Assembly (NCBI GenBank): GCA_009103225.1
Contig: RHPI01002048.1
Span: 361,702 to 425,701 of the forward strand
Direction: 5' to 3'
Length of the DNA: 64,000 bases
From: Chlorokybus atmophyticus
Taxonomy: Eukaryota; Plantae; Mesostigma and Chlorokybus algae
The notes beneath the pieces were generated by a model. The model saw nothing but the letters and a program-made list of their open reading frames with translations, was not told the DNA's origin and did no database searches. Both the position numbers and the translations under genes were made by a program. Below, in pieces: positions 41,926-49,199 of the stretch (positions are counted from its first letter, which is position 1; each line of letters opens with the position of its first letter).

Positions 41926-43305
41926 TTCAAGGTGTTGGCGATTGTTGAAATCTACTGGTTTCTGCCCGAAAAGCTAACAGCCAGTAGTTGTAGATTGTGG
42001 TTCTTAGCGGCAACAAGATGTCACTGTTGTATGCAACGTTTGCATCATTGCTTTAGTAATGTATGACGTAGCCCGGCTAAAGCTGTTTGTGGAGGCAGCT
42101 TGATGTTGTACATGCAGCAGAACTACGCCAACAATTGCTGCTTGTTAGCTGATGCGTGTGGAATGATGAGTACTGAGGGGTGTCCACATGAATCAACCAG
42201 AAACAGAGTGATACGGAGTGTTACAAAGTCATGGCTATGAGATGTTCAATCCTTCTGGGGTAGTCAGAGGCGGGAGTGGTCTCAGTGGACCAGCACTACA
42301 TGTGAGCCCCTACTGTATGTACACATGTACATGGCATGTGCAGTCCATAGTGTGCAGTTCATAGTGTCAGTTTGGCTGAGCCGTCAGTGTAGGTCAGCCC
42401 GTGAGTTTTGGCAAGCACTGCATCACACTTGTAACAACCATGCAATAACACATCTGTTTGCCTTAAGTTATGATTCAAAGATAACAAAGGATGCACAAAT
42501 AGTATATAGACTCCCTACGCTCTGCAGGTGGTACCCCTCTGACTGCTGTTGCCTCCCCCACCCATGCCTGCCTGCTGGTGTTTGAGGGTCGTAGTTGCTT
42601 ATGTCCTAGCTACCATAGCAGCTTTGCAACAGCTCGAGCTTGGCGCCCATGCAATATATGTGCATTGTGCGGTGTGTTGATGTGATTTTCATTGGGCCCC
42701 TGGACGAGTGAGTTGCTACTTTGCAACTCCTATGTATGCTCTATAGGCTTGTCTATACCCCATGATGCAAGTGCCAGGCAGTAGCAAACACAGCAAGCAA
42801 GCGCACACACCGCAAGACCTTGTCAATAAGTCAGGTGAGGGGCAATGCAAGGCTATGTGCTCTATCTATGCATATGTATTAATATGTGTGAGGGCAATGG
42901 TGGCAGCAGCTCCCTTTGATGACGCGTGCTTGGTAGGTGACGTCTCAATCTGCATTGCTGCATGCTGTGCACGGTGAGTACAAAGCATGCAATGCGGTGA
43001 TGATTGCATTCATCTTCTTGACTGTGCCATTTATGCACGGCGTGAATGCGATGCTTTTACACACCTGCAAGGGTGTGCCACAGCTAACGACTTCCAAACA
43101 GCAGCAGCCATGCGCAAGCTGTCGTGGTCGCCTTCGCGTATACTCTTGCACAATCGCCTCTCAAGCACTGAGGCCTAGGCCTCTAACTGCATGCGTGCAT
43201 AGATGTTGTTGTGCAAAGGACGTGCTGAACATGTACACTGTATGCTGTCTTGACAGGGAACTGCACTGCGACCATATCAACTGTTTTTCGGCGGCGGCGG
43301 GGAGT

Positions 43306-46300
43306 ATGGCCAGCGAGCAGACGCCCTTGCTCGCCGCCGCCGTCCCCGCCGTCGTGTACAGGACGTATGGTAGCCACGGGGACGTCCACCGCATTGAAGT
43401 GGCTGAGTGTGACAGCAACCACGACAAGGACGAGGACGAGGAGGAGGAGGTGAACGAGGAGGAGGCGGCGGTGGTGGTAAAGGACCAACAGGAACCCGTG
43501 GAGCAACGCCACGATGAAGCAACTTCCCGCAGCTTGTTTTGCGCGGCGCCGCTACTGTGGCGCCACGCCAGCTGTCGCTTTGTAGCCCTGCTGCTCGCCG
43601 TCGCCGTAGCTCAGGCAAGGAGCATGCTTGCACATGAGCAATGCATGCGCTGCGTCCATCGGCTAGGAACTGGAGATGCACCTGATTGTCCTTTTCTCAA
43701 CTGAATCCCGTTTTGACTCGTCAGGTGTTGATTATATCTTACGTGGGCACAATCGCCGGCTCCTTCTACAAGGCGCTTGTTGACCAAGACAAGCAGGTCA
43801 GTGTGAGCATTGTGATTACCAATATTGATTGCTATGACTGAGCTTAACACAATGGTGCATGTAACTACCATTGAAAACACGTCCATGTATGCAATGCCAG
43901 TGGTGCGAGTCCTGCTGTGCTGATAGCAAACACAGTGTTCGTGACCAACAAGCAACTTCCGCAGTTGTTTTTATGGACACTGGCTAGCTGCGCTTTGTGG
44001 TATCCGCTTGTGGCAGTAACAGCAGCAGCCCAGGTGAGCAGCACGCAATGCCTGCATGGGTTACACTTCATGCAAAAGCACAACAGTCCTCCCATTGCTC
44101 GAGCCAGCTAGCTGTGGGCAATTGCCATAGAGACACATAGCTGATCTATCACCATGTACAGGTGTATGTCAAGGGAAACCTTGCATTGCACTGGCGCATA
44201 GCTCTCACGCAGCTCGCCCATGAGCTGATCATGCATGACCGCATGTTCTTTACACTTGCACACGATGATGTTCTCGACAACCCTGATCAGCGCATTGCTG
44301 ATGACATCAACAAGTTGTGCCTCACGTCAGCTGGTAAGCAGTCCTTTACCCATTGCTGTCCCACCGCGGTGATGTTGTTGCATGGGCTAACGCACGTGCA
44401 CTTACTGCAGATGTGCTGGCGATAGCTGCACCACTGCCATTGATGATTGTTTACTACACAATCTTGGTACATAGGATTGTTGGTTTGGGCGGCACAGCCG
44501 CCGTGTATTGTTTCTTTGCGCTCAGCTGCGTCGTCAACCGCCTGTTGGTGGCACCAGTTGCAGCTTTGGTGTTTCAGCAAGAACAGTGTGAAGGAGACTT
44601 TCGCACAAAGCACATGAGGTTTGATGCCAGACTTGTATGCTTTCATGCTAGGGCAGCATTATTGTTCAGCAACTCATTCCATTGCTTGTGCTACGCCATC
44701 CGTTATGAAACGCCAAGCTGAGTTTGAATTGGATGTTGATATACGCCTTGTCTTGGTAAGCTCTAACCATCCCTCATCTACCTCAGGTTACGGGCGCATG
44801 CTGATGAGATAGCTCTGGCGAAGGGCTCGCACACAGAGCAGTGCGCTTTGCAGCAGGGGTTTTCGTTGCTGGCGCAGTGTCAGAAGCGTGTGGTGACATC
44901 ACACGCAGCTCTTGCGTTAGCCATGAAGTTCTTTGACTACTCAGGTATGGCATGCGTCATCAACCGTTAACTGCGCAACTGGCAAGTGAGTCGTACAGGA
45001 CTCGCAAGTTGAATGTATGCAGGAGCTGCGCTTAATTACATCGTCATGGCTGTTCCTGTTTTTGGAGGTGCCTTTGCTGCAGATGTTGGCAAGGGCGAGT
45101 TGGCGCGTCTCATCAGCATCTCCTCCTTTGCCGTTTTGCAGCTGGTATACAGGTATGCTGTTTGAGTGTCGTGCATGTTTACATGGCATCAGACTCTGTT
45201 GCAACGCACAGTTTCTCAGTGTACACATGTGCGTAATACAAGTCCGTTACTCAGCTCAAGGCAGTACAGGACTTGCAGTGTGTCTCCTGTTGCGAGAGAA
45301 TTTGCCCAAGTATAGAAAACCTCATCGTTACAAATAGAAAGAAGGCCTTGTTGCCTGCATTCTGCTGCTTCAGTGTGTGGGTGGGGTTTGAGAGCGTCAG
45401 GGAAATGTTACGCCAAAACCACCATGACACTATCACCAACAACAATGAGACCACAGACACTTGGTGATAGTGTCGTCGCGCTATGTGCAGCTTTACTAGG
45501 TTCAATGACTTGTCAGCAAAAGTAGCCGATGCTGCGGCGTATGGTGCGCGCGTGACGCAGCTCTTTGCCAACATCACGCCTGGCCTAAAGCAGCAAATGA
45601 CGCCGCAACAGCGCACCACGCACCAAACTGTCACCAGCAGCCCAGGCGCAACGCTCATGCCGCCAACCCAACTGTTGTGCTTCTTTGATAATGCGGAACC
45701 CAGGGTTGTGGAGTTTTCCATCCATCGCCCGCCTCCACTTTTGCTCGATGGCATCACAGCCTTGTGCACTGGTGTCGATGTTAGCAATATTCTTGCGGTG
45801 CCAACCTTCCAACCCGCTGCACTGGACTTGTGTTCTGGTAAGCATGCCGATAGCAAACTATCATAGGTATGGTTTGAAGTTGCATACGTCTTCATGGTCT
45901 TGTTTGTTTGTTTGAACGAGGACCTGAGGTTGTTTGCTGCAGATGCCATGGAGGTGAAGGCAGAGATGAATCGCTTGTTGTCGCAGTTCATAGTATGGCA
46001 GGAACCTATCTGCAAAGCACTTGCAGAGAAAGGCTTCTGGGCATCAGGCGTCAACCCTGAGACGGGTGGCTTGTTGGGTGCCGATCATGCTGACGTGCGT
46101 GCCGCTCATTACAGCGAAGTGCGTGCAGGCCAGTTCATGCTCGGTTATGCCGCCAAGATGTGTGGCCGATGTCCCGTTCTGATCCACCCAAAATATGGCA
46201 CAGCCGTGTATCCAGCAACGCTGCTGACCGACGCGCCGCTCAACACCCTTCTTGATGTCATATGCACATCCAGTGTAGCTCATCTCAGCAGCAAAGGCTG

Positions 46301-47260
46301 CATGCCTGGCATGCAGCGCATACAACCGCAAGTGATGCTGGCGAACGTTTCATTATCAACTCCGGCCGGAGTGCTGCTTATCGAGATGTTGAGTCTCAGA
46401 CTGTGCGGCGGTGACAGGTTGCTTATCACCGGGCCTAGCGGGTGCGGAAAGTCCTCACTTATCAAGGCTATTGCAGGGTTGTGGCAACTGCAAGCAGGTG
46501 CACTTTGTGTGGCCTATTGGTTCGCACCACTCGGCAATTTGCTGTGGTTATGCACGAACTCGCAGAGTACAATAACATGGCAACGTCATTGTGATGTCCT
46601 CATGACAGGTTATATATCAGTGTTCCCGAGCCAAGATGCATTCATGGCGCTTTCGCAGAGGCCTCTGATGGCGCCAGCAGGCGGCCTTGCTGCGCAGCTT
46701 ACTTATCCGTCCATGCCAAACCTCAACAGCTGCAAGGTCCTGAGGCTGCAAGAGCTGCTTCACCTCGTTGACCTGGATCATCTCCTCCTACGCTGTCGAG
46801 GGGACTGGGAGGTAAGTTGCAAGTACTTGCATGCCACAACATGTGCATGAAGAGGGTGGGTACATGACTGGGACACTGATGGATTTGCCTGCATTGGCAG
46901 GCGGAAATGGATTGGCAAAGTGACTTGTCGGAAGGGGAGAAGCAGCGCATTGCTATTGCCAGGGTGTTGTGTCATAGACCGCCGATTGTCATGCTTGATG
47001 AGGCAACATCTGCACTCCCACCAGACTGTGAGGTATGTGAGGCATGCCATGAAGCTGTTGTTGCTGCATTGCAGTACGCGTCATCAATTGGTTGTGCGCA
47101 GGACCGCATGTACACACTGATCACCAGTTGCTGTCAACTGGTGATATCCGCGTCTCATCACATGACGCTGGCAAAGTTCCACACAGCGCAGCTGTTGCTG
47201 GGCGTGCAGCCTGGCGGAGGTTGGCGATTGCAACACTTGAATACATTGGCTGGTCAATAA
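43306..47260 (+). CDS. ABCD4: ABCD4-like ABC half-transporter with an in-frame MMADHC/CblD-like domain between TMD and NBD
   Basis: Hand-spliced exons keep one frame. TMD: SYVGTIAGSFY, LHWR..LT, LDNPDQRIADD, EGDFRTKHMRLR, FFDYSGAALNYIVMAVPVFGG, FTRFNDLSAKVADAAAYGARV (ABCD4-type). CblD-like segment at 45702-46262. NBD: Walker A GPSGCGKSS, signature LSEGEKQR, Walker B MLDEATSAL, H-loop SASH. The first intron uses a GC donor (43615). Confidence 0.9.
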
Positions 47261-49199
47261 GGCGGACACAAGGTTGCAAGGGTGCACAGTCAGTCTCCGC
47301 TTTCAGTCACGTGGCCATGCAGCGGTGTATGCAAAGCCTGGTGACGCGTGGCAAGGTAACATTTGTCTGCATGAAGTACACACCAGTCGGTTTTGATAAT
47401 CGCCAGAGTTGGCCCAGTCAGCAGACTTGGTGCGAGGCTTTCTGGACTGTATGCAGGGAGCATCTACCGTCTTGCGTTCTAAATGCAGCAAGGGATGCCA
47501 CAAGCAAGCAAGGAAGCAAGGCGCAAAGCTGCGCAAGAGCAGCGTGGCTGTGTGCATTGAGGAGCGAGACAACTGGCGTCATGCAATGTGGCACGGTGCT
47601 ATGTCATTGCGAGACATGCTGATTGCCACCGACCGTGCCGGTTTGCAATCCGCCTGTTTGCCAGAATAAAGTCGCAGACGGGTATTCTATTGGCTAATTG
47701 AAGGGTTGCAAGTTCGTTTTGGCATTTGCTGCAATCGCAGCTTCCGGCTTCAACTGATAGGGTTGCATGGTCAATCCGCTTTGATGATGCTTGCGCATGT
47801 AAACAACATCAAGCCTCTTGATGTAAAACAGGGGAAGGCTGTGTGTTGAAGTGTCCAGTATTTTTTTACTTGACATTGACACTTCGAAGCAAAATTGTGA
47901 TAATGCCCCCCCGCCCTCTCGGCTTAATCTGGTAGGGTTACATAAACAACCAATCCACTTGATATCATGCTTGCGCAGGTAATTAGTTAATACAAAGCCC
48001 TTGGATGTATAAGAGGTGAGGGTAGTGAATAAAATTGCCTATTGGTTTTTCCAAAAAATCACACAATCATTATGTAGCATACATGATATGATATTGCCCC
48101 CACCCTCCCCTAAACGCATGTATAGCATATAAGTCACATTTCATACATGCTCACACGCCGTGCACATACATGTATGCATAAAGTGAGGTGACTATGGTTA
48201 TTGGTAGCAAAACTCATCAACGCAAGCTTTTTTTTCATAAGATCAAAAAGCGGCATCAATAGAACAAATACAATAAACCCCTTTGGGATGGCATGCGTAA
48301 CTTTGATTGAGATGATAAAGGGCAATTCTTTTTCATATTCCATTTATAGATTTTCTCATTACAAGCGTGTTATCATGCTTAATTAGTTGGCAGGGCTTTT
48401 ATATATAGACATTACATTACAAAGTAAAAAACCGCATACAAGTAGAATACAACAACCCTAAATGCAATCGTCAGATTGACTTAAGTATATGTTGAAGTAA
48501 AATTGTAATACTTGCAAGCACAGCTTGCCTATCAGCTAAAGTATGCTTGATCTCTATTCAGCACCGATTGCAAGAGCTCTTATTGCAGAGCCATCATAAA
48601 GCCAATGTAACGTAATGCACTGAGCGGCTTAATGGTTGTGGACTAGATTGGGGGCTTTACAAGAGTCAGGTAGGGGGGTTGCTAGGCCTGGTCTAGCCCC
48701 TCTCCACCCAAGCGCTCCACCCAAGCGTGAACATGCGACGCACATGAGTCACGTCGCACGATGGCTTTATTGGAGATCACCGATTGGTCAAAAACACCAG
48801 GAGACATCGACAAACGGATATCCGTCCCCTTTCTTCCCAACCGTAACAGCGGTCCGCGGCGAATACCCAACCGCCCGATACGGTCGTATCTCGCGCAAGT
48901 AGGCTACAGGCTGTAGCCCTAGACATTTACCAGGTCTAGGCCATGCCGGCGGTTCGCACCCTGCTTGGCTGTACCTTGCCGCGAAGGGGCAGCACTGAGA
49001 GCCTGATTCGTTGGGTCTGGACCAGGACATGCGTAACAAGATTCTGCCGCGGGCGAAAGGCGTAATCGGAGCCGCCAGCTGGCACTCTCCTCCAACACAA
49101 GAGTCAAACGCGATATCTCAGCATTACTTTACACTTGGCCAAATTGGGCAAGAAAAATCAAGCGCATCCTGCTCCTGCTCCTGCTCCTGCTCCTTGACC

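What the first reader, a model, noticed from the sequence alone, without database searches (positions are those of the whole stretch)
43306..47260. ABCD4-type B12 exporter with a CblD/MMADHC domain inserted in frame between TMD and NBD
Seen: after the last TMD helix the frame runs into RVVEFSIHRPPPLLLDGITALCTGVDVSNILAVPTFQPAALDLCS-DAMEVKAEMNRLLSQFIVWQEPICKALAEKGFWASGVNPETG...LGYAAKMCGRCPVLIHPKYGTAVYPATLLTDAP, then into the NBD. The TMD end and domain start share one exon, and the domain end and Walker A share the next (starting 45943; intron 45838-45942), so this is not two genes merged by annotation. Knowledge (recalled): the human MMADHC core reads RVECAIQTCPELL...LMILTVTQ...DM...E.E.LL..F...IC..L...GYWADFIDP.SG...LG...LGCCKVIRH..WGT......TNA, which aligns motif by motif. 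In mammals ABCD4 (with LMBD1) exports cobalamin from lysosomes and separate CblC/CblD proteins receive it. Inference: a Rosetta-stone fusion that tethers the B12 trafficking scaffold to the exporter, implying a compact vacuolar/endosomal B12 import route in a green alga. I do not know of a description of this architecture but cannot search to confirm novelty.
Basis: partly seen in the sequence, partly recalled or inferred. Interest (0 to 1): 0.93.

Follow-up and report, generated by a model that had tools for sequence, protein, structure and literature searches.

The report
B12 exporter with built-in CblD chaperone
A green alga (Chlorokybus) makes a single protein in which the vitamin B12 chaperone CblD sits inside an ABCD4-type B12 transporter; many green algae share this fusion, which suggests that the exporter and the chaperone work in direct contact.

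Summary
Window 43306-47260 (+) is a 12-exon gene of Chlorokybus atmophyticus (JGI Chlat1 model 8407). Transcript contigs from two studies carry all 11 splice joints, so TMD, insert and NBD lie on one mRNA. Pfam scores on the protein are ABC_membrane_2 177 bits, MMADHC 52 bits (cut-off 27) and ABC_tran 65 bits. The insert matches only CblD/MMADHC in the PDB (E 1e-9). Its AlphaFold model (pLDDT 93.6) hits only human CblD structures (TM 0.7-0.8, E 1e-11). The TMD is clearly ABCD4-like: 166 bits against 57 for ABCD1, and 491 against 305 with the family profile. The NBD alone does not discriminate.

The fusion is not a Chlorokybus oddity. The same order occurs in more than 20 sequence clusters, including Micractinium, Chlorella, Nannochloris, Myrmecia, Pedinophyceae, Chloropicon, Tetraselmis, Chara and Spirogloea, and in an intronless single ORF. 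The insert is as conserved as the TMD and NBD. Only the C-terminal CblD core is present. The family-wide cysteine corresponds to human Cys-262; the Cys-261 position is never cysteine.

Most likely function (inferred): an endolysosomal or vacuolar cobalamin exporter that passes B12 to its own tethered chaperone. I found no paper describing the fusion; the main survey treats CblD and CblJ as separate proteins. It is a new variant of a known kind, of solid interest.

The parts
43306..47260 (+). Whole coding region of the fused gene (12 exons, 837 aa). It equals JGI Chlat1 protein 8407 (834 aa, P0001) except for 3 aa at intron 1.
   Evidence: Gene model; all joints seen in RNA contigs; identity to P0001.
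43315..43332 (+). N-terminal EQTPLL, which fits the acidic dileucine pattern [DE]xxxL[LI]. It lies in a disordered acidic tail (aa 1-76, pLDDT below 50).
   Evidence: An xPLL motif recurs near the N-terminus of about ten orthologues. Its sorting function is inferred.
43576..45578 (+). Transmembrane domain (ABC_membrane_2, six long helices, model aa about 91-402), spread over exons 1-8. It contains NPDQRIADD (44279-44305) and EGDFR (44590-44604).
   Evidence: Pfam 177 bits. The TMD alone scores 165.6 bits against human ABCD4 and 57 against ABCD1. Helices in the AlphaFold model.
45579..45647 (+). Flexible linker 1 between TM6 and the insert.
   Evidence: pLDDT below 50 for P0001 residues 401-422. 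Only 20% mean pairwise identity among orthologues.
45648..45837 (+). First part of the CblD/MMADHC-like domain, in the same exon (8) as the end of TM6. RVVEFSIH lies at 45702-45725.
   Evidence: (aligns to human CblD from residue 144).
45838..45942 (+). Intron 8 (GT-AG, 105 nt) inside the CblD-like domain.
   Evidence: The joint from 45836/7 to 45942/3 is present in both RNA contigs.
45943..46286 (+). Second part of the CblD/MMADHC-like domain, in the same exon (9) as Walker A. The beta-hairpin CGRCPVLIHP lies at 46161-46190. The conserved Cys codon is 46170-46172 (C565 in the model, C562 in P0001). YPATLLTDAP lies at 46209-46238.
   Evidence: Pfam MMADHC, profile positions 170-265 of 272; PDB alignment; column counts; coordinates.
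46287..46319 (+). Flexible linker 2 between the insert and the NBD.
   Evidence: pLDDT below 50 for P0001 residues 598-611; 15% identity among orthologues.
46320..47257 (+). Nucleotide-binding domain (ABC_tran). Motifs: Walker A GPSGCGKSS 46431-46457, Q-loop SQRP 46653-46664, signature LSEGEKQR 46925-46948, Walker B with catalytic Glu IVMLDEATSAL 46985-47017, H-loop SASHH 47147-47161.
   Evidence: Pfam 65.5 bits; motif coordinates; PDB scores.
47354..47454 (+). Further GT-AG joint downstream of the stop codon, probably a 3'-UTR intron.
   Evidence: The joint from 47353 to 47455 is present in both RNA contigs; not studied further.

Best explanation
The locus is one real, expressed gene of Chlorokybus atmophyticus. 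It encodes an ABCD4-type ABC half-transporter into which the C-terminal core of the B12 chaperone CblD/MMADHC is inserted. The insert sits between TM6 and the nucleotide-binding domain, on two flexible linkers. The fusion looks ancient: it is shared by chlorophyte and streptophyte algae and is consistent with a single origin.

Proposed mechanism (inferred). The protein dimerises like other ABCD transporters in an endolysosomal or vacuolar membrane, with NBDs and CblD domains in the cytosol. ATP-driven cycling moves cobalamin from the lumen to the cytosolic mouth of the transporter. There the tethered CblD domain takes part in the hand-off, using the cysteine at the tip of its beta-hairpin (C562 in P0001) as a thiolate ligand to cobalt. 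This probably happens together with a separate CblC. The cofactor is then passed on to cobalamin-dependent methionine synthase.

The N-terminal part of human CblD is absent, which fits a cytosolic, methylcobalamin-only route.

Shown here: gene structure, transcription as one mRNA, domain identities, fold, conservation and taxonomic spread. Inferred: substrate, membrane, direction of transport, Co-S chemistry and partners.
For: One mRNA: RNA contigs from two studies carry the joints that link TMD, insert and NBD. Domains: ABC_membrane_2 177 bits, MMADHC 52 bits, ABC_tran 65.5 bits on P0001. Insert: only CblD chains are hit in the PDB. AlphaFold pLDDT is 93.6. The Foldseek top 8 are all human CblD, at E about 1e-11 and TM 0.62-0.82, and the next hit is at E 5e-3. 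ABCD4 type: TMD 165.6 bits against 57 (ABCD1) and 52 (ABCD3). The family profile gives 491 against about 305 bits. The AFDB Swiss-Prot top hits are human and mouse ABCD4. Family: the same domain order occurs in Micractinium, Chlorella A99, Myrmecia, Pedinophyceae, Tetraselmis (a partial protein, MMADHC + ABC_tran), Chara, Spirogloea and many unnamed proteins. Chloropicon is counted through the direct phmmer hit to its insert, because Pfam MMADHC did not report there. Nannochloris is counted only by its length and profile score; its insert is not shown to be CblD-like. P0121 is an intronless 838-aa ORF whose insert is likewise detected only by the direct phmmer hit. In the domain tree all fused copies lie on one side of a branch with 93% SH-aLRT support. 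Constraint: the insert has 39% mean pairwise identity, against 38% for the TMD, 37% for the NBD and 15-20% for the linkers. H567, P568, Y575 and P576 are invariant, and the hairpin Cys is kept in 14 of 19. The ATPase motifs are intact. An N-terminal xPLL motif recurs in orthologues. Human biology: ABCD4 exports B12 from lysosomes (PMC11311337), and the CblD hairpin cysteines bind cobalt (PMC12501144). An unchecked scan note reports a cobalamin-dependent methionine synthase elsewhere in this genome.
Against: No functional data exist for any member. The NBD alone scores higher against ABCD1 (139 bits) than against ABCD4 (105 bits). No tree with animal ABCD1-4 references could be built. The residue aligned to the human cobalt ligand Cys-261 is Arg here and is never Cys in the fused family; only the Cys-262 position is conserved. 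The chemistry may therefore differ. Five of 19 fused proteins lack Cys at that position (three of these have one three residues earlier). The position of the insert relative to the transport pathway is not reliable in the full-length model (pTM 0.52). Localisation rests on a short motif. I could not check whether Chlorokybus also has CblC, LMBD1 or a free CblD.
Confidence: 0.7

Rival explanations
1. Regulatory-domain reading. The embedded CblD domain is not a hand-off chaperone. It acts as a cytosolic B12 sensor or plug that couples the cofactor status of the cytosol to ATPase and transport activity, as the regulatory C-terminal domains of some bacterial ABC importers do.
For: The domain is inserted exactly in the TMD-NBD connection, where movement is transmitted. 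The vicinal resolving cysteine of human CblD is missing, so release chemistry like the human one is not evident.
Against: The insert hangs on two poorly conserved, low-confidence linkers. That suits a tethered module better than a rigid allosteric coupler. The conserved surface motifs are those of the whole CblD family.
Confidence: 0.13
2. Same fusion, different place or substrate. The transporter works at another membrane (plasma membrane, ER, plastid or peroxisome) or carries another corrinoid-like or hydrophilic cargo, so the lysosome-like export model does not apply.
For: The NBD is closer to peroxisomal ABCD1. Bacterial relatives of this fold import varied hydrophilic compounds (BacA/Rv1819c appears among the hits). 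Dorrell et al. found few credible endomembrane targeting predictions for algal B12 proteins.
Against: The TMD, which sets the substrate, is strongly ABCD4-like. A covalently attached B12 chaperone makes a substrate other than cobalamin unlikely. An acidic dileucine-type motif recurs at the N-terminus.
Confidence: 0.12
3. Vestigial insert. The CblD-like domain is an evolutionary relic that now serves only as a spacer.
For: The Cys-261 position is lost. Some members (P0051, P0121, P0122, P0206) no longer reach the Pfam MMADHC threshold.
Against: The insert is as conserved as the TMD and NBD across lineages that diverged very long ago, with invariant HP and YP motifs. The predicted fold is intact at pLDDT 93.6.
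Confidence: 0.04
4. Artefact. Two neighbouring genes were merged by assembly, annotation or read-through.
For: None was found. The only discrepancy is a 3-aa difference at intron 1 between the JGI model and the RNA contigs.
Against: Domain boundaries lie inside exons. Two independent transcript contigs carry the joints. An intronless orthologue is one ORF. More than 20 clusters share the domain order.
Confidence: 0.01

Closest known systems
Human/mouse ABCD4 (CblJ), the lysosomal cobalamin exporter (PDB 6JBJ; UniProt O14678)
   Same: It is a half-transporter with ABC_membrane_2 and ABC_tran. It is the best hit for the TMD (165.6 bits), for the whole-family profile (491 bits) and in AFDB Swiss-Prot. 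The ATPase motifs are intact.
   Different: The algal protein carries about 200 extra residues (a CblD domain plus two linkers) between TM6 and the NBD, and a long acidic N-terminal tail with an EQTPLL motif. Its NBD is no closer to ABCD4 than to ABCD1. Human ABCD4 relies on a separate escort protein, LMBD1 (PMC11311337); whether the alga does is unknown.
Human CblD/MMADHC, C-terminal core (PDB 5CV0, 6X8Z, 9MRS)
   Same: Pfam PF10229 match and the same fold (TM 0.7-0.8). The alignment runs from human residue 144 to 284. The beta-hairpin has a conserved Cys and the HP...G..YPA motif.
   Different: It is not a free protein. It lacks the N-terminal roughly 140 residues of human CblD, including the mitochondrial leader (the match starts at residue 144). 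It has one conserved hairpin Cys, at the Cys-262 position, and not the vicinal Cys-261/262 pair. Cys-261 is the cobalt ligand in the human complex (PMC12501144). Chlorokybus itself has CGRC.
Peroxisomal ABCD1-3 / plant ABCD1 (Comatose) / yeast PXA1-2
   Same: Same superfamily fold. The NBD scores 139 bits against ABCD1.
   Different: The TMD scores only 52-57 bits per half-transporter against 166 for ABCD4. None of these carries a CblD insert.
Bacterial SbmA/BacA-type ABC transporters (for example Rv1819c, which imports B12 and other hydrophilic compounds)
   Same: ABC_membrane_2 fold; a distant sequence match (125 bits).
   Different: Much more distant. No chaperone domain. They carry the additional Pfam SbmA_BacA signature, which is absent here.

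Membership tests
ABCD4 (lysosomal cobalamin transporter, CblJ) | Half-transporter built from ABC_membrane_2 (type IV exporter TMD) followed by ABC_tran | tested here: met
   Pfam 177 and 65.5 bits on P0001; six long TM helices in the model.
ABCD4 (lysosomal cobalamin transporter, CblJ) | Closer to ABCD4 than to ABCD1-3 (best-hit criterion) | tested here: met
   TMD: 165.6 bits against 57 and 52. Family profile: 491 against about 305 bits. AFDB Swiss-Prot top two hits are ABCD4. Caveat: the NBD alone ranks ABCD1 139 > ABCD3 110 > ABCD4 105 bits.
ABCD4 (lysosomal cobalamin transporter, CblJ) | Monophyly with animal ABCD4 in a sampled ABCD phylogeny | not tested
   The capped searches did not return animal ABCD1-4 sequences as usable records, and sequences may not be typed in.
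ABCD4 (lysosomal cobalamin transporter, CblJ) | Catalytically competent NBD motifs | tested here: met
   Walker A GPSGCGKS, Q-loop SQRP, signature LSEGEKQR, Walker B LDE and the H-loop His are all present.
ABCD4 (lysosomal cobalamin transporter, CblJ) | Lysosomal or vacuolar location and cobalamin export | not testable with these tools
   There is only an N-terminal [DE]xxxL[LI]-like motif, recurring in orthologues.
MMADHC / CblD | Match to Pfam PF10229 above the gathering score | tested here: met
   52 bits (cut-off 27), E 1.1e-13, profile positions 118-265 of 272; 39.8 bits on exon 9 alone.
MMADHC / CblD | Fold of the CblD C-terminal core | tested here: met
   Insert model pLDDT 93.6. The Foldseek top 8 are all human CblD, TM 0.62-0.82.
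MMADHC / CblD | Cobalt-ligating cysteine in the beta-hairpin (human Cys-261, with vicinal Cys-262) | tested here: inconclusive
   A Cys is present at the hairpin tip, but it aligns to Cys-262. The Cys-261 position is Arg here and is never Cys in the fused proteins. PMC12501144 says B12 can coordinate to either cysteine in wild-type human CblD.
MMADHC / CblD | N-terminal region of the full-length protein (mitochondrial leader and the segment preceding the core) | tested here: not met
   The alignment to full-length human CblD starts at residue 144. TM6 and a short linker precede it.
MMADHC / CblD | Cofactor-dependent complex with CblC/MMACHC | not testable with these tools
   No CblC from this genome was available to me.

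The most novel reading that the evidence does not exclude
The fusion is a true Rosetta stone. Across eukaryotes, humans included, CblD (with CblC) would dock directly on ABCD4 at the cytosolic mouth and take cobalamin by cysteine-cobalt ligation as it leaves the lysosome. Green algae have simply made this contact covalent. If so, what surveys of plants and algae score as separate 'CblD' and 'CblJ' genes would in the green lineage, perhaps including hornworts, be one gene.
Probability: 0.35. Interest if true: 0.82.

Novelty: new variant of a known kind. Interest (0 to 1): 0.7.

Why it matters
How cobalamin passes from the lysosomal exporter to the cytosolic chaperones is an open step in the otherwise well-mapped human B12 pathway. 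B12 uptake in algae is barely understood beyond CBA1 (PMC10828217). A conserved natural fusion of the exporter with CblD gives a direct, testable prediction that the two proteins act in contact. It also offers a single-polypeptide system for structural and biochemical work on the hand-off. It bears on comparative surveys that count CblD and CblJ as independent markers of B12 metabolism in the green lineage (PMC11439496). Finally, it shows that the cysteine conserved across the whole CblD family is the Cys-262 position and not the Cys-261 ligand seen in the human complex.

Tried and rejected
1. The word-indexed homologue searches gave little. With the insert as region, only 2 hits came back. 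With the TMD as region, 13 mostly bacterial hits. With the family alignment, mostly bacterial ABC proteins and no animal ABCD1-4. A reference-anchored ABCD tree was therefore not possible, and I used PDB and AFDB best-hit scores.
2. Exon 8 alone (115 aa) gave no Pfam or PDB hit. The N-terminal third of the domain becomes detectable only in the spliced protein.
3. Foldseek with the full-length model does not separate ABCD4 from ABCD1/3 in the PDB.
4. The ESM Atlas search returned only generic ABCD and bacterial clusters, and no large cluster with the triple architecture.
5. Long ORFs in the flanks (36-55 kb) gave no Pfam hits, so I read no gene context.
6. The supplementary tables of Dorrell et al. 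are not held, so I could not check whether the same accession appears in both their CblD and CblJ lists.
7. Gene merging by annotation was considered and rejected.
8. The first call for sequencing runs failed as busy and was repeated.
Full report
**What is at the locus.** Reading 43000-47600 and translating all frames shows a split eukaryotic gene on the + strand. I assembled a 12-exon model spanning 43306-47260 (837 aa). It has ten GT-AG introns and one GC-AG intron, the first one, at 43615-43724. Exon 8 (45491-45837) contains the end of TM6, a linker and the first third of the insert. Exon 9 (45943-46497) contains the rest of the insert, a second linker and Walker A.

**Transcription.** Two public RNA data sets from different studies hold about 70% of the sampled words of 45400-46700. 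Their assembled contigs were laid on 43100-47500. One (3215 nt) spans all 11 coding introns; the other (2015 nt) covers the gene from exon 7 onward. Both run continuously through 45488-45836 and 45942-46494. Neither contig skips the insert. The first joint has a skip of 110 nt. This fits my GC-AG intron and not the JGI model, which is 3 aa shorter. A further joint, 47353 to 47455, lies after the stop codon. Contigs drop rare variants, so minor isoforms are not excluded.

**Organism and annotation.** The representative-library search returned a 100% identical 834-aa protein (P0001). The word-indexed collection names it jgi/Chlat1/8407, so the organism is Chlorokybus atmophyticus, an early-branching streptophyte alga. 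It carries precomputed Pfam hits PF10229, PF06472 and PF00005.

**Domain identities.**
- On P0001, Pfam gives ABC_membrane_2 177 bits (residues 93-340), MMADHC 52 bits (434-587; E 1.1e-13; cut-off 27) and ABC_tran 65.5 bits (635-775).
- Exon 9 alone already reaches 39.8 bits for MMADHC. Exon 8 alone gives nothing.
- Against all PDB sequences, the spliced insert (P0001 425-600) hits only CblD/MMADHC chains (5A4R at E 1.2e-9; also 5CUZ/5CV0, 6X8Z and 9MRS). It aligns to residues 144-284 of full-length human CblD.
- An AlphaFold model of the insert, built with 66 family sequences, has pLDDT 93.6 and pTM 0.89.
- In Foldseek against the PDB, its eight best hits are all human CblD structures (E 3.5e-11 to 1.8e-9, TM 0.62-0.82). 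The next hit is at E 5e-3.
- In the full-length model (pLDDT 74.9) the insert is a folded module flanked by two low-confidence linkers, 401-422 and 598-611.

**Which ABCD subfamily.**
- The whole protein scores 266 bits against human ABCD4, 190 against ABCD1 and 157 against ABCD3. The two-halved Arabidopsis ABCD1 reaches 322 bits only as the sum of four stretches.
- The TMD alone scores 165.6 bits against ABCD4, 57 against ABCD1 and 52 against ABCD3.
- A profile of 19 fused proteins scores 491 bits against ABCD4 and about 305 against ABCD1 or ABCD3.
- In AFDB Swiss-Prot, the two best structural matches are human and mouse ABCD4.
- The NBD alone goes the other way: ABCD1 139, ABCD3 110, ABCD4 105 bits.
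- I could not obtain animal reference sequences as records, so no anchored tree was built. The assignment to the ABCD4 type rests on best hits and on the substrate-facing TMD.
- The ATPase motifs are all present.

**The fusion is a conserved family.** A search of 1.84 billion representatives with the 106-aa exon-9 part of the insert gave 464 hits at E ≤ 1e-3. About twenty of the best 150 are proteins of 650-1400 aa with the domain in the middle. Pfam confirms the order ABC_membrane_2, MMADHC, ABC_tran in most of them.

Where sources give names, they are all green algae from both branches of the lineage:
- Micractinium conductrix (annotated as ABCD4)
- Chlorella sp. A99
- Nannochloris (annotated as a putative lysosomal cobalamin transporter ABCD4; 998 aa, insert not shown to be CblD-like)
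- Myrmecia bisecta
- Pedinophyceae sp. YPF-701
- Chloropicon primus
- Tetraselmis (partial)
- Chara braunii
- Spirogloea muscicola

One member (P0121) is an intronless 838-aa ORF on a 774-kb metagenomic contig with tightly packed neighbours. Its TMD and NBD score in Pfam, and its insert matches the Chlorokybus insert directly (E 5.8e-9), although Pfam MMADHC does not report it. So the long TMD-insert-NBD reading frame does not depend on any splice prediction. A genomic contig carrying P0010, the closest relative of the Chlorokybus insert, shows ABC_membrane_2 exons upstream of MMADHC + ABC_tran.

In a maximum-likelihood tree of 66 CblD domains, the 46 unfused copies lie on one side of a branch with 93% SH-aLRT support. 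All fused copies lie on the other side, including two partial ones that Pfam shows to be fused. A single origin is therefore not rejected. The tree is a quick search on a short domain and is unrooted.

**Constraint on the insert.** Among 19 fused proteins, mean pairwise identity is 39% in the insert, 38% in the TMD and 37% in the NBD. It is 15-21% in the linkers and the N-terminal tail. Invariant insert residues include H567, P568, G571, Y575 and P576.

**The hairpin cysteine.**
- Human CblD has vicinal Cys-261 and Cys-262 at the tip of a beta-hairpin.
- Cys-261 ligates cobalt in the CblC-B12-CblD complex, and Cys-262 is proposed to resolve that bond. B12 can coordinate to either cysteine in the wild type (PMC12501144).
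- In Chlorokybus the gap-free alignment puts Arg at 261 and Cys at 262, with another Cys three residues earlier, giving CGRC.
- Across about 150 family members, the nearly universal cysteine is the 262 position. The 261 position is Cys in roughly half of the unfused proteins and in none of the fused ones.
- Fused proteins typically read G-x-C-P-V-x-x-H-P.
- A thiolate is therefore available at the right place, but disulfide-driven release of the human kind is not evident.

**What is missing.** Only the C-terminal core of CblD is present, because the match starts at human residue 144. From my own knowledge, the N-terminal part of human CblD carries the mitochondrial leader and serves the adenosylcobalamin branch. 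Dorrell et al. report that streptophytes lack methylmalonyl-CoA mutase. A core-only, cytosol-facing CblD fits a route dedicated to methionine synthase.

**Localisation hints.** The first 76 residues are predicted to be disordered. They contain EQTPLL followed by an acidic tract. An xPLL or xPLI motif, often preceded by an acidic residue, recurs near the N-terminus of about ten orthologues. A short motif is weak evidence.

[quoted passage not shown] In the algal protein the NBD and hence the insert must be cytosolic. A dimer would place two tethered CblD domains next to the cytosolic opening. I propose that they capture or stabilise the emerging cofactor through the hairpin thiolate, probably with a separate CblC, and then deliver it to methionine synthase. 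An unchecked scan note reports a cobalamin-dependent methionine synthase elsewhere in this genome. Everything in this paragraph beyond topology is inference.

**Literature.** I ran full-text searches for:
- MMADHC and ABCD4 with fusion or algae
- MMADHC with ABC transporter and Chlamydomonas
- PF10229
- CblD and CblJ with fused or fusion
- MMADHC- or CblD-domain and -like terms

None found a description of this architecture. [quoted passage not shown] Its only use of 'fusion' concerns an unrelated methionine synthase. The Chlamydomonas CBA1 paper mentions only BLAST homologues of ABCD4 and LMBD1. A Chlamydomonas ABC inventory assumes its three ABCDs are peroxisomal. The library does not cover all journals. 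Databases already display the three Pfam domains on these proteins, so the feature can be found but appears not to have been described.

**Verdict.** The finding is better than a single-genome curiosity, because it is a conserved and apparently ancient fusion of two components of one pathway. It is less than categorically new, because both parts are known families and the inferred function extends the known pathway. Interest 0.7.

Noticed in passing
window 43600-43730: The public JGI model (P0001, 834 aa) differs from the RNA-supported model by 3 aa at intron 1. The RNA joint skips 110 nt, which fits a GC-AG intron at 43615-43724 and not the annotated splice.
   Followed up: yes
window 47354-47454: Both RNA contigs show another GT-AG joint about 95 nt after the stop codon. 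It is either a 3'-UTR intron or the start of a transcript continuing into the next gene.
   Followed up: no
P0037 (749 aa) and P0041 (822 aa): Two other CblD fusions exist in unnamed sequences: Gpi16 (a GPI transamidase subunit) + MMADHC, and MMADHC + MmgE/PrpD (the 2-methylcitrate dehydratase family, involved in propionate metabolism). The second links CblD to propionate metabolism in another way.
   Followed up: partly
Alignment of about 150 MMADHC domains: The cysteine conserved across the whole CblD family is the human Cys-262 position. The Cys-261 position, which is the cobalt ligand in the human CblC-CblD structure, is Cys in only about half of the unfused members.
   Followed up: partly
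P0006 (Chara braunii, 1924 aa): A second Chara protein holds a CblD-like stretch and is named as containing a reverse transcriptase domain. It is probably a copy disrupted by, or merged with, a retroelement.
   Followed up: no
P0214 (1624 aa, ENA metagenome): The precomputed Pfam hits combine P-type ATPase domains with ABC_membrane_2, ABC_tran and SbmA_BacA in one protein. It may be a gene-call merger or an odd fusion.
   Followed up: no
window 43315-43460 and orthologue N-termini: An xPLL motif near the N-terminus, often with an acidic residue upstream, recurs in about ten fused orthologues. This supports the earlier scan note that it is a sorting signal.
   Followed up: partly
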